Shown in pieces: positions 8,376-10,130 of a DNA stretch of 64,000 nt; positions within the stretch are counted from its first letter, which is position 1; each line of letters begins with the position of its first letter. The notes under the pieces were generated by a model, which saw only the letters and a list, made by a program, of their open reading frames with translations, was not told the origin of the DNA and did not search any database. Origin of the DNA: Tetramitus jugosus. Taxonomy: Eukaryota; Protista; Heterolobosea. The position numbers were made by a program, and so were the translations under genes. The stretch lies in assembly GCA_937625935.1 (NCBI GenBank), contig OW569360.1, forward strand, positions 124,001-188,000, in the 5' to 3' direction.

Positions 8376-10130
8376 TTATTCAGCTTCTTCTTCCTCTTCA
8401 TTTGCCAGGTTCAAAATACGAGCAATCTGAGTGCACAGAGTAGAGCCAACAAGTCGTTTGTATGTGGCAATCTTGTCAAGCTCAGACTGTGGGATATCAA
8501 TCCGTGCCTTTCTAATTGTCTGAACGGTGGCCAAGGATCTCTCAATGACACATACTACATCATCTACATTGGTTACATCAACACTCTCTGCTGGAACATT
8601 GTCTGGTGCAAGTCTCAGTTTTCTTTCTTCTGGCCGAACCTTGGTGTGATCGTTGTCTTGATTCACTCGATCAATACATTGTGAGATGGGAACCCAGGTG
8701 TAAGTAACAGGACACAGTAAATCGCTCGGTTTATACCCAGCCTTATATCTCATCTTCTTACATGTATGAATATAAAAACCCATGTAATAATAGTGAAGAT
8801 TAGGTAATCTCCGCGATAGTAGCTTCACATACAAAATTTCGGCAAGTGCAGAGTACACGCCAGGCTTCAGAAACATCATATCTGGATCATAGTACAAATA
8901 AACAGAGGACAAACAGCTGGGCAACAAATCAACAACACCAACCATAAACAATTTTCCGTCCAGACAATAATGAACATGATACGATCCATATCCACTGAAT
9001 CCAGAGAAAGTCATTGACGCAAGTCCCTCCAATCCTGGAATGGCATCTTCCATTGGGAACGAAGAACACTCTGCACCTGTTCGTTCCATCTTCATTGGAG
9101 AATCAACCAAGAATCCGATATATGATTTCTCAGTGACTTCATCATATTCGTCCTTGTGAACAGCCACTTGATACTTTCTATACAACTCAAATGCCTCCTG
9201 ATTGAATGCAGCAGGATGCAAACTCAGCTCCAAGCGATGAACAGGCTCCTTCTTTGCCTTCTTTGATTCTTTTTGATCATCATGAGATGATGAACTTTCA
9301 CTTCTGCTTCTCGATCGGCCACTATCATTTTTCGAGTCACTGGTTTGAGCCGTTTGTTGTTCGCTCAATTCGTTTTGCAATCTCAGTTTGCCACTCTCGT
9401 TCAAATAAAAATTAATGAATCCATTGTTGCTCGCTTCTATCGATGTAATATATTGTGTAATTTGATCATTTTGCTTCAGTTCATCCACAATTCTCTGAGT
9501 GAGCTGACCAGGCGAAGCAAACTTGTCACTCTTCAACTTCTTCAAATGTCCAAACACTTGCATGCCGACACTGCAAAATAAATCACCAACCTTGGTCTTC
9601 TTGTGCTGTTGGACAGGAGGTATGACATGGACTTGATCCTCTCCACTCAACACATCAATGTTCAATCGATCTTTCAACGTGACAAAAATCTCTCGTGCAA
9701 ATTGACTTTGGAGCGTGTGACTAGCCACGTGTGATCGACTCTGCTCCACAACCTTTTGTTTCTTCTTTTTCTTTGCTCCGTCTTGTTCTTCCTTGGTATC
9801 TGCAGCAGCAGCAGGCATCACACCATCTTGCAAATACGCTGCTATTCTCTGAATCAAATTCTTGTGTGATTGACTGGGCATAAACTTGTGAACGTCTAGT
9901 CGGATCGTGTACTGCAAAGAGAGACACTTTTCCGGATGTGGCTTGTACAGATATTTACCTGATCTTCTCCAGTTTCGATCCACCAATTGTTGATAATGAG
10001 AACATGTGAGATCGACGCCCCAGAGACCATTGGCATGAAAGCTATCTGGAGCTTTGGTGTAACCATCTTTGGAGACATCATACCCCGTGTCATAAACGAC
10101 TGAAAACTGCTGTTGCTGCTGACTGCTCAT
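8376..10130 (-). CDS. ATE1: Arginyl-tRNA--protein transferase 1 (N-degron pathway) with inserted ArgRS-N-like domain
   Basis: YQQLVDRNWRRSGKYLYKP, QYTIRLD, LYRKYQVAVH, GSYHVHYCLDGKLFMVGVVDLLPSCLSSVYLYYDPD, YYYMGFYIHTCKKMRYKAGYKPSDLLCP. Confidence 0.97.
   Translation of the reverse strand: MSSQQQQQFSVVYDTGYDVSKDGYTKAPDSFHANGLWGVDLTCSHYQQLVDRNWRRSGKYLYKPHPEKCLSLQYTIRLDVHKFMPSQSHKNLIQRIAAYLQDGVMPAAAADTKEEQDGAKKKKKQKVVEQSRSHVASHTLQSQFAREIFVTLKDRLNIDVLSGEDQVHVIPPVQQHKKTKVGDLFCSVGMQVFGHLKKLKSDKFASPGQLTQRIVDELKQNDQITQYITSIEASNNGFINFYLNESGKLRLQNELSEQQTAQTSDSKNDSGRSRSRSESSSSHDDQKESKKAKKEPVHRLELSLHPAAFNQEAFELYRKYQVAVHKDEYDEVTEKSYIGFLVDSPMKMERTGAECSSFPMEDAIPGLEGLASMTFSGFSGYGSYHVHYCLDGKLFMVGVVDLLPSCLSSVYLYYDPDMMFLKPGVYSALAEILYVKLLSRRLPNLHYYYMGFYIHTCKKMRYKAGYKPSDLLCPVTYTWVPISQCIDRVNQDNDHTKVRPEERKLRLAPDNVPAESVDVTNVDDVVCVIERSLATVQTIRKARIDIPQSELDKIATYKRLVGSTLCTQIARILNLANEEEEEAE

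What the first reader, a model, noticed from the sequence alone, without database searches (positions are those of the whole stretch)
9397..9722. ATE1 carries an inserted arginyl-tRNA-synthetase N-terminal (Add1)-like domain
Seen: between the ATE_N and ATE_C halves lies a folded-looking insert, VGDLFCSVGMQVFGHLKK...SPGQLTQRIVDELKQNDQITQYITSIEASNNGFINFYL. Established: this follows the Arg_tRNA_synt_N pattern (GDY.cn.am.l.k.....P..lA..i...l.......i..ve.ag.GFINF.L), the ArgRS domain that contacts the tRNA(Arg) D-loop. Inference: this ATE1 may select its Arg-tRNA donor with a module borrowed from ArgRS. From memory, plant ATEs have a GH[LI]NF-ending insert in a similar place, so this may be an ancient and under-recognised feature.
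Basis: partly seen in the sequence, partly recalled or inferred. Interest (0 to 1): 0.8.

Follow-up and report, generated by a model that had tools for sequence, protein, structure and literature searches.

The report
ArgRS tRNA-reading domain inside ATE1
A protist arginyl-transferase (ATE1) carries, between its two conserved halves, a folded copy of the domain that arginyl-tRNA synthetase uses to recognise tRNA-Arg; the same domain is present in plant and many protist ATE1s but was not detected in animal or fungal ones, which gives a testable idea of how this enzyme picks its tRNA.

Summary
Confirmed. The single-exon gene at window 8376-10130 (minus strand, 584 aa) is an ATE1. Residues about 140-245 (window 9396-9713) form a true Arg_tRNA_synt_N (Add1) domain.

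- Sequence: Pfam 38.6 bits against a cut-off of 21.5. A profile built only from ATE1 inserts hits solved ArgRS chains (E 2.3e-7). An ArgRS-only profile finds this insert as the only other match in the genome (E 2.3e-13).
- Structure: the AlphaFold model has pLDDT 92. All seven ArgRS representatives top an exhaustive PDB comparison (Z 8.5-12.4; next fold 6.4).
- Anatomy: the domain hangs on two disordered, basic linkers, at the site where human ATE1 has its tRNA-binding loop.
- A20 pocket: the hairpin keeps the small residue, the stacking Phe and the Asn. The genome's tRNA-Arg genes have A20, while the Lys, Ile, Ala and Gln tRNAs read have U20.
- Spread: the insert occurs in land plants including Arabidopsis, green algae, Cyanophora, Rhodelphis, Heterolobosea, Amoebozoa, Cafeteria, Plasmodiophora, Chromosphaera and Corallochytrium. 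It was not detected in animals, the sampled fungi or Gefionella.

No paper found describes it. D-loop reading is inferred, not shown. An unchecked first-reader note records the same idea elsewhere in this genome.

The parts
8376..10130 (-). ATE1 gene: a single ORF of 584 codons plus stop
   Evidence: ORF list. Pfam finds ATE_N and ATE_C. The full-length model matches human ATE1 8tzv_A with target-normalised TM 0.88, and 33 ATE1 chains match at E<=0.001.
9861..10037 (-). ATE_N region (residues 32-90); three of the four usual metal-binding cysteines are missing
   Evidence: Pfam 58.3 bits. Cysteines occur only at residues 43 and 69 in the N lobe. Alignment with other ATE1s.
9714..9818 (-). Linker 1 (residues 105-139): disordered and basic, with a lysine run
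   Evidence: pLDDT below 50 for residues 108-137; pI 9.6.
9396..9713 (-). Inserted Add1 (Arg_tRNA_synt_N) domain, residues 140-245
   Evidence: Pfam. Insert-only profile against solved ArgRS chains, E 2.3e-7. AlphaFold model pLDDT 92.3. Foldseek top 22 matches all ArgRS. VIA Z 8.1-12.4 to ArgRS N-domains. ArgRS-only profile hits window 9330-9614 at E 2.3e-13.
9570..9590 (-). Counterpart of the ArgRS F-G-D-Y-Q motif (residues 181-187: V-G-D-L-F-C-S)
   Evidence: Aligned to human ArgRS F-G-D-Y-Q-C-N. The roles of E. coli F36 and Q40 are taken from PMC8975779. G-D is kept; the F36 and Q40 positions have changed.
9408..9431 (-). A20-pocket hairpin (residues 234-241: S-N-N-G-F-I-N-F) between predicted strands 228-233 and 239-243
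   Evidence: Aligned to human ArgRS A-G-P-G-F-I-N. S234, F238 and N240 correspond to E. coli A78, F82 and N84 (PMC8975779). Strand positions.
9234..9395 (-). Helix 246-264 followed by linker 2 (265-299): disordered, basic and Ser/Arg-rich
   Evidence: pLDDT below 50 for residues 264-292; pI 9.7.
8712..9197 (-). ATE_C region (GNAT catalytic core), residues 312-473
   Evidence: Pfam 135.4 bits. All 33 columns that are invariant across 20 diverse ATE1s lie in this half, at residues 320-472.

Best explanation
Shown: this ATE1 is a normal arginyl-transferase core, with ATE_N and a GNAT-type ATE_C. Spliced into it, at the loop between the N lobe and the GNAT core, is a complete ArgRS-type Add1 domain held by two flexible, positively charged linkers of about 30-35 residues. 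The same insert is homologous across plants and many protist lineages, so it is old, probably as old as the last eukaryotic common ancestor. Inferred: the domain does here what it does in ArgRS. It docks on the outer corner of tRNA-Arg and reads the D-loop, above all A20, with its beta-hairpin pocket, while the GNAT core holds the acceptor end. That would give ATE1 a second, identity-specific grip on Arg-tRNA-Arg. Animals appear to have replaced the domain by a basic helix in a disordered loop at the same site, and most fungi appear to have lost it.
For: Domain identity:
- Pfam PF03485 scores above its cut-off.
- A profile built only from ATE1 inserts finds human cytosolic ArgRS (E 2.3e-7) and six further solved ArgRS sequences.
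- In 1.84 billion representatives the same profile finds 357 proteins at E<=0.001. The listed ones are ATE1s, ArgRSs and short N-terminal fragments of about 100 aa.
- An ArgRS-only profile searched on the whole genome finds only the ArgRS gene and this insert.
- The AlphaFold model was built from ATE1 inserts alone (pLDDT 92.3, pTM 0.85). In an exhaustive comparison with 48,161 chains its top seven matches are the ArgRS representatives (Z 8.5-12.4), all aligned to their N-domains; the next fold scores Z 6.4.

Tethering: linkers 108-137 and 264-292 are disordered and basic.

Function:
- Add1's only described role is recognition of the tRNA-Arg D-loop and A20 (PMC3956977; PMC8975779).
- In the window protein S234, F238 and N240 match E. 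coli A78, F82 and N84.
- Of 37 representative inserts, 29 keep the G-x-[ILVM]-N motif (the Asn is part of that pattern). Among these 29, 24 have a small residue at -4 and 24 have F, Y or H at the stacking position.
- Fourteen tRNA-Arg(UCU) genes and one tRNA-Arg(UCG) gene have A20, while the Lys, Ile, Ala and Gln tRNAs read have U20.
- The insert occupies the site of the human loop 105-268, whose helix contacts the D- and T-arms in the cryo-EM complex (PMC11283454; alignment).

Age:
- The insert is present in Discoba, Amoebozoa, Holozoa (Chromosphaera, Corallochytrium), Archaeplastida, Stramenopiles and Rhizaria.
- A single origin is not rejected (AU p 0.40).
Against: - No binding or activity data exist.
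- Two of the five E. coli A20-contact positions are changed: F36 to Val and Q40 to Phe.
- Yeast and mouse ATE1 work with an acceptor-arm minihelix, and ATE1s without the domain are active, so it cannot be needed for catalysis (PMC10115844; PMC11283454).
- In yeast ArgRS the Add1 to D-loop contacts do not contribute to specificity (PMC8975779).
- Several close relatives in this paralogue clade (P0005, P0006, P0008, P0011) have lost the hairpin motif.
- AlphaFold does not fix the position of the domain relative to the core (pTM 0.66).
- The tree of this short domain is unresolved.
Confidence: 0.58

Rival explanations
1. The insert is a true Add1 homologue that no longer reads the D-loop. It would serve as a structural spacer or a regulatory lid, for example by occupying the substrate cleft or steadying the basic linkers that do the RNA binding.
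For: The F36 and Q40 equivalents are changed. Some relatives have lost the hairpin motif. The mouse disordered loop at the same site is predicted to sample the substrate cleft (bioRxiv 10.1101/2024.08.23.609426). The linkers themselves are lysine- and arginine-rich.
Against: Among 22 land-plant ATE1 inserts the Gly, Asn and Phe of the hairpin motif are three of only five invariant columns, and the Ala, Cys, Asn and His of the same motif are nearly invariant. These are the A20-pocket hairpin residues. Across 29 motif-bearing inserts the small residue and the aromatic are kept in 24 each. This conservation has lasted across most eukaryotic supergroups.
Confidence: 0.27
2. The domain is a protein-protein docking module, for example to ArgRS or to a translation complex for hand-over of Arg-tRNA, rather than an RNA reader.
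For: Only general plausibility: ATE1 must compete with elongation factor for Arg-tRNA. No tool result speaks for it.
Against: No such role is described for Add1 in the papers read. The conserved positions are the RNA-contacting ones.
Confidence: 0.08
3. The match is a chance similarity, or a gene-model artefact that fuses two genes or reads through an intron.
For: None found.
Against: The ORF is uninterrupted. A 98% identical 583-aa product is called on an independent assembly. The same architecture occurs in many taxa. The profile hits are reciprocal and the fold match is strong.
Confidence: 0.02

Closest known systems
Add1 / Arg_tRNA_synt_N (PF03485), the N-terminal domain of arginyl-tRNA synthetase
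   Same: Same fold: Z up to 12.4, about 90-100 aligned residues at rmsd 2.0-2.8 A. The sequence motifs G-D and G-F-I-N-F are kept. The hairpin pocket keeps the small residue, the aromatic and the Asn.
   Different: It sits in the middle of a GNAT-type aminoacyl-transferase, on flexible linkers, rather than at the N-terminus of a class I synthetase. The positions matching E. coli F36 and Q40 are changed. tRNA binding is untested. PMC3956977 calls Add1 unique to ArgRS among the aminoacyl-tRNA synthetases.
Human/metazoan ATE1 loop 105-268 with its tRNA-binding helix (PMC11283454)
   Same: Same insertion point between the N lobe and the GNAT core. In human ATE1 it contacts the D- and T-arms, the region an Add1 domain would reach.
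   Different: No detectable sequence relationship (hhalign probability 0.1%). It is disordered in the apo enzyme rather than a folded domain. [quoted passage not shown]
Yeast ATE1 (S. cerevisiae, K. lactis; 7TIF, 7WG1, 8E3S)
   Same: Same catalytic core; the full-length model matches them at Foldseek E about 1e-13 to 1e-17.
   Different: Per bioRxiv 10.1101/2024.08.23.609426, yeast ATE1 has no insert at this site. In the Mucoromycota and Glomeromycota ATE1s measured here the gap between the two halves is only 34-57 residues. tRNA contact in the yeast complex is through the acceptor arm.
Plant ATE1/ATE2 (Arabidopsis thaliana P0292 and others)
   Same: Homologous insert at the same place, ending in G-H-[IL]-N-F. 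Riccia ATE reaches the Pfam cut-off (25.9 bits).
   Different: The plant version has an extra stretch inside the domain, His at the stacking position, and no G-D. Arabidopsis itself gives no Pfam hit.

Membership tests
ATE1 (arginyl-tRNA--protein transferase) | ATE_N (PF04376) and ATE_C (PF04377) above their curated cut-offs | tested here: met
   58.3 bits (cut-off 27) and 135.4 bits (cut-off 25).
ATE1 (arginyl-tRNA--protein transferase) | Fold of solved ATE1 enzymes (GNAT core plus N lobe) | tested here: met
   Human ATE1 8tzv_A at E 8e-29 with target-normalised TM 0.88; 33 ATE1 chains at E<=0.001.
ATE1 (arginyl-tRNA--protein transferase) | N-terminal CxxC...CC metal site. This is conserved and regulatory in the yeast and human enzymes; it is a usual feature, not the family definition. 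| tested here: not met
   Only one of the four cysteines is kept. The second paralogue on contig 7 keeps all four.
ATE1 (arginyl-tRNA--protein transferase) | Arginyl transfer from Arg-tRNA to N-terminal Asp, Glu or oxidised Cys | not testable with these tools
   All 33 columns invariant across 20 diverse ATE1s lie in the catalytic half of this protein, at residues 320-472.
Arg_tRNA_synt_N / Add1 domain | Profile match above the Pfam cut-off, and reciprocal profile hits | tested here: met
Arg_tRNA_synt_N / Add1 domain | Add1 three-dimensional fold | tested here: met
   Model pLDDT 92.3. Z 8.5-12.4 to all seven ArgRS cluster representatives, next fold 6.4. Chain ranges fall in the N-domains.
Arg_tRNA_synt_N / Add1 domain | A20 pocket residues (E. 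coli F36, Q40, A78, F82, N84) | tested here: inconclusive
   Three of five are kept or conservatively replaced (S234, F238, N240). V181 and F185 differ (alignment; PMC8975779).
Arg_tRNA_synt_N / Add1 domain | Binding of the tRNA-Arg D-loop | not testable with these tools
   Context only: this genome's tRNA-Arg genes have A20, and the other tRNAs read have U20.
Arg_tRNA_synt_N / Add1 domain | Position at the N-terminus of a class I ArgRS catalytic domain | tested here: not met
   It lies between ATE_N and ATE_C. So it is filed as an Add1 domain in a new host protein, not as an ArgRS.
Metazoan ATE1 tRNA-binding loop | Sequence similarity to the conserved animal loop motif | tested here: not met
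   hhalign probability 0.1% for both the protist and the plant insert profiles against 13 animal loops. Only the insertion site is shared.

The most novel reading that the evidence does not exclude
The ancestral eukaryotic ATE1 already carried an ArgRS-derived Add1 domain, so arginylation and arginine charging read the same tRNA identity nucleotide (A20). The domain was then replaced by a basic helix on the way to animals, and lost in fungi, whose nuclear tRNA-Arg lack A20 and whose ArgRS ignores position 20. On this reading, ATE1's hold on tRNA co-evolved with tRNA-Arg identity rules.
Probability: 0.35. Interest if true: 0.85.

Novelty: new variant of a known kind. Interest (0 to 1): 0.72.

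Why it matters
How ATE1 picks Arg-tRNA-Arg out of the tRNA pool, in competition with the ribosome, is an open question in the N-degron field. The solved yeast complex shows acceptor-arm contacts only. The human structure added a disordered loop touching the D- and T-arms, which was read as a speciality of higher organisms that Arabidopsis and amoebae lack (PMC11283454).

The finding reverses that picture. Plants and many protists have, at the same site, a folded module borrowed from the one enzyme that is known to read tRNA-Arg identity. This gives direct experiments in Arabidopsis, where ATE1 and ATE2 control oxygen sensing and flooding responses: delete the domain, mutate its hairpin, or mutate A20.

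It is also a rare case of a synthetase's identity-reading domain being reused in another tRNA-dependent enzyme. Databases already flag the domain in some entries; the Acrasis kona ATE1 is even named 'arginyl tRS'. Eight full-text searches found no paper that describes it.

Tried and rejected
- **Single-sequence search.** phmmer of the insert against solved chains gave only noise. The word-index search restricted to the insert found only two close relatives. Profiles were needed.
- **Recent copy of the genome's own ArgRS.** Rejected. The only ArgRS (contig 15) has an N-domain so diverged that Pfam does not see it. BLAST to the insert gives E 0.057 over 30 residues.
- **Homology to the yeast 'variable domain'.** Rejected. 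That domain is C-terminal (PMC13592012) and no solved ATE1 matched the insert.
- **Hidden Add1 remnant in the animal loop.** No signal.
- **Domain tree to find the donor lineage.** Unresolved: 21 of 43 branches are open and branches are long. It only shows that one origin is not rejected. The ranking of solved ArgRSs, with human cytosolic ArgRS best, is a hint and not a result.
- **Plant-only profile against solved chains.** The best hit is an ArgRS but it is weak (E 0.38). The plant link rests on the profile-profile match to the protist inserts and on Pfam hits in Riccia and Cyanophora.
- **Expression.** No read evidence was obtained and read laying was not used.
- **Splicing.** The gene is a single exon, so no spliced model or joined step was needed.

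Full report
**Observation**

They lie within one uninterrupted ORF, 8376..10130 on the minus strand, 584 aa.

Pfam gives:
- ATE_N at residues 32-90 (58.3 bits);
- Arg_tRNA_synt_N, PF03485, at residues 164-243 (38.6 bits, cut-off 21.5, E 1.6e-9);
- ATE_C at residues 312-473 (135.4 bits).

The excised piece alone scores 42.9 bits. A 98% identical 583-aa product is called on an independent public assembly.

**Is it really an Add1 domain?**

Four lines of evidence do not depend on the Pfam model.

1. A profile built only from 14 ATE1 inserts (alignment A2) hits solved ArgRS chains. Human cytosolic ArgRS scores E 2.3e-7. Neisseria, Klebsiella, Plasmodium, Pyrococcus and E. coli ArgRS follow. No solved ATE1 is hit.
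2. The same profile, run over 1.84 billion representative proteins, finds 357 proteins at E<=0.001. Among the 140 listed beyond the query set, 14 are further ATE1s. At least 39 are ArgRSs with a recognisable catalytic core. The rest are mostly fragments of about 100 aa matching at their N-terminus. Spot checks give PF03485 scores up to 78.6 bits.
3. In the reverse direction, a profile of ten full-length ArgRSs searched on the whole 26.35-Mb genome finds the ArgRS gene on contig 15 and, as the only other hit, window 9330-9614 (E 2.3e-13).
4. An AlphaFold2 model of residues 134-250, made from ATE1 inserts alone, is confident (pLDDT 92.3, pTM 0.85). Foldseek's top 22 PDB matches are all ArgRS. 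In an exhaustive VIA-align comparison with 48,161 representative chains, the top seven are the ArgRS representatives (Z 8.5-12.4, 89-102 aligned residues, rmsd 2.0-3.1 A). All align through their N-terminal domains. The next fold scores Z 6.4.

The full-length model (pLDDT 82) matches human ATE1 8tzv_A (target-normalised TM 0.88) and 32 further ATE1 chains from yeast, K. lactis and human. After those come ArgRS, through the insert, and then FemX and MprF. The protein is therefore an ATE1 core with an ArgRS Add1 domain spliced in.

**Anatomy**

- In the full-length model the Add1 domain (140-245) is well folded.
- It is flanked by two segments with pLDDT below 50, residues 108-137 and 264-292.
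- Both linkers are basic, pI 9.6 and 9.7. One has a lysine run and the other a Ser/Arg-rich stretch.
- The relative position of domain and core is not fixed (pTM 0.66).
- By alignment, the insert occupies the same gap between ATE_N and ATE_C as the human loop 105-268.

**Pocket residues**

According to PMC8975779, E. coli ArgRS holds A20 by F36 and Q40 of the F-G-D-Y-Q motif, by A78 and N84, and by stacking on F82. PMC3956977 places the pocket floor on strands beta3 and beta4.

The alignment to human ArgRS puts V-G-D-L-F (residues 181-185) on F-G-D-Y-Q, and S-N-N-G-F-I-N (234-240) on A-G-P-G-F-I-N. So S234, F238 and N240 correspond to A78, F82 and N84, while the F36 and Q40 positions are changed. 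The hairpin lies between predicted strands 228-233 and 239-243.

Of 37 representative ATE1 inserts, 29 keep the G-x-[ILVM]-N motif; the Asn is part of that search pattern. Among these 29, 24 have a small residue (A, S, T or G) at -4, and 24 have F, Y or H at the stacking position. Among 22 land-plant inserts, the Gly, Asn and Phe of the motif are three of only five invariant columns.

**tRNA context**

Fourteen identical tRNA-Arg(UCU) genes and one tRNA-Arg(UCG) gene have A directly after G18-G19, which is A20. The Lys, Ile, Ala and Gln tRNAs that were read have U there. A20 is thus available as a tRNA-Arg mark in this organism.

The genome has a single ArgRS. It is of the M-S-S-R type and its N-domain is too diverged for Pfam. 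The ATE1 insert is therefore closer to the Add1 consensus than the synthetase's own domain, and it is not a recent copy of it.

**Spread**

PF03485 reaches or nears its cut-off at the same place in:
- P0004, a metagenomic sequence (45.6 bits);
- P0054 (24.3 bits);
- Riccia sorocarpa (25.9 bits);
- Cyanophora paradoxa (25.4 bits);
- P0264 (20.9 bits);
- Plasmodiophora brassicae (20.1 bits).

It gives weaker hits in P0010 (19.5 bits), Pharyngomonas kirbyi (18.5), P0011 (17.3), P0039 (14.4) and Cafeteria roenbergensis (14.1).

The big search added Chromosphaera perkinsii, Acrasis kona, Rhodelphis limneticus and Heterolobosea sp. BB2.

Arabidopsis ATE1 has no Pfam hit. However, land plants share Y-T-S-N and A-C-N-G-H-[IL]-N-F motifs. 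The plant insert profile matches the protist one with probability 97% and E 1.1e-10 over 105 columns. Many angiosperm ATE1s also hit the protist profile directly, at 1e-5 to 1e-8.

- 113 carry the insert;
- none of the animal sequences do (their gap is mostly 115-215 residues and holds an unrelated conserved basic motif);
- none of the Mucoromycota or Glomeromycota do (gap 34-57 residues);
- none of the three chytrids or Gefionella do.

Animal loops show no similarity to the insert.

A tree of the domain is poorly resolved. The AU test does not reject one clade of ATE1 inserts against ArgRS domains (delta lnL 1.09, p 0.40). With one shared insertion site, a single old acquisition followed by losses is the simplest reading. 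It remains an inference.

**This genome's second ATE1**

Contig 7 carries a 642-664 aa paralogue that groups with the Acrasis kona enzyme. It keeps the CxxC...CC site. It has a weaker Add1-like insert ending in N-G-F-V-N-I, with no Pfam hit.

An unchecked first-reader note of this scan (s1-532871) reports an ArgRS-like domain in an ATE1 on another piece of this genome, which may be this paralogue.

The best named relatives point to a heterolobosean. This is an inference from protein similarity only.

**Mechanism**

Shown: a folded Add1 domain, tethered by basic flexible linkers, at the site from which the human loop reaches the D- and T-arms (PMC11283454).

Inferred: it binds the tRNA-Arg elbow and reads A20 while the GNAT core takes the acceptor end. 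I put this at about 0.58.

The main rival, at about 0.27, is that the fold is kept for a structural or regulatory purpose without base-specific reading. Points against the preferred reading are listed under Best explanation.

**Literature**

- PMC10115844 describes yeast ATE1 as contacting the acceptor arm.
- bioRxiv 10.1101/2024.08.23.609426 treats the region as a disordered insertion present in plants and slime mould as well.
- PMC3956977 calls Add1 unique to ArgRS among the aminoacyl-tRNA synthetases.
- Searches pairing ATE1 or arginyltransferase with Arg_tRNA_synt_N, Add1 or 'Add1 domain' found nothing relevant. Nothing relevant turned up in the other papers read.

Domain databases do flag the hit in some entries: it appears as a precomputed PF03485 match, and the Acrasis protein is named 'arginyl tRS'. 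The library does not cover most subscription journals, so 'not described' is a bounded statement.

**Limits**

- Only two structure predictions were allowed, so no plant insert was folded.
- The gene has no introns, so no joined model was needed.

**Verdict**

The finding is a new variant of known kinds: a known enzyme carrying a known domain in an architecture not described in the searched literature. It is widespread and probably ancestral, and it comes with a specific, testable mechanism.

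Noticed in passing
G000:C15 about 250383-253325 (L004 2884..5826, minus strand); outside the window: The genome's only detected ArgRS is 980 aa and of the M-S-S-R (mitochondrial/bacterial-like) type. It has an N-terminal extension of about 240 aa. A PF01588 tRNA_bind domain (residues 471-558) is inserted between the two halves of the catalytic domain. Its own N-domain is too diverged for PF03485, even though the nuclear tRNA-Arg genes have A20.
   Followed up: partly
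window 9861-10070 (ATE1 residues about 20-90): This ATE1 keeps only one of the four cysteines of the conserved CxxC...CC zinc/iron-sulfur site. The same loss is seen in its nearest relatives (P0004-P0006, P0008, P0009, P0011), which suggests a metal-free ATE1 paralogue clade.
   Followed up: partly
G000:C7 554033-557464 (L005 1216..3210, minus strand); outside the window: A second ATE1 paralogue, which groups with the Acrasis kona enzyme. It keeps all four cysteines and has a weaker Add1-like insert (hhalign E 4.4e-4) with an A/F/N hairpin triad.
   Followed up: partly
P0191 (Acrasis kona KAL0476525.1): A public ATE1 entry is named 'arginyl tRS' at NCBI, probably because of the embedded Add1 hit. 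This is a likely misannotation.
   Followed up: no
P0235 and P0166 (metagenomic proteins): Strong Arg_tRNA_synt_N matches sit next to a B3_4 domain and next to a metallophosphatase domain. These could be fused gene calls or further host proteins for Add1.
   Followed up: no
G000 contigs C54 and C56: The two contigs carry tRNA genes at identical coordinates (Asn, Pro, Tyr, His, Leu, Lys and Gln read on C54). This looks like the mitochondrial genome assembled twice.
   Followed up: no
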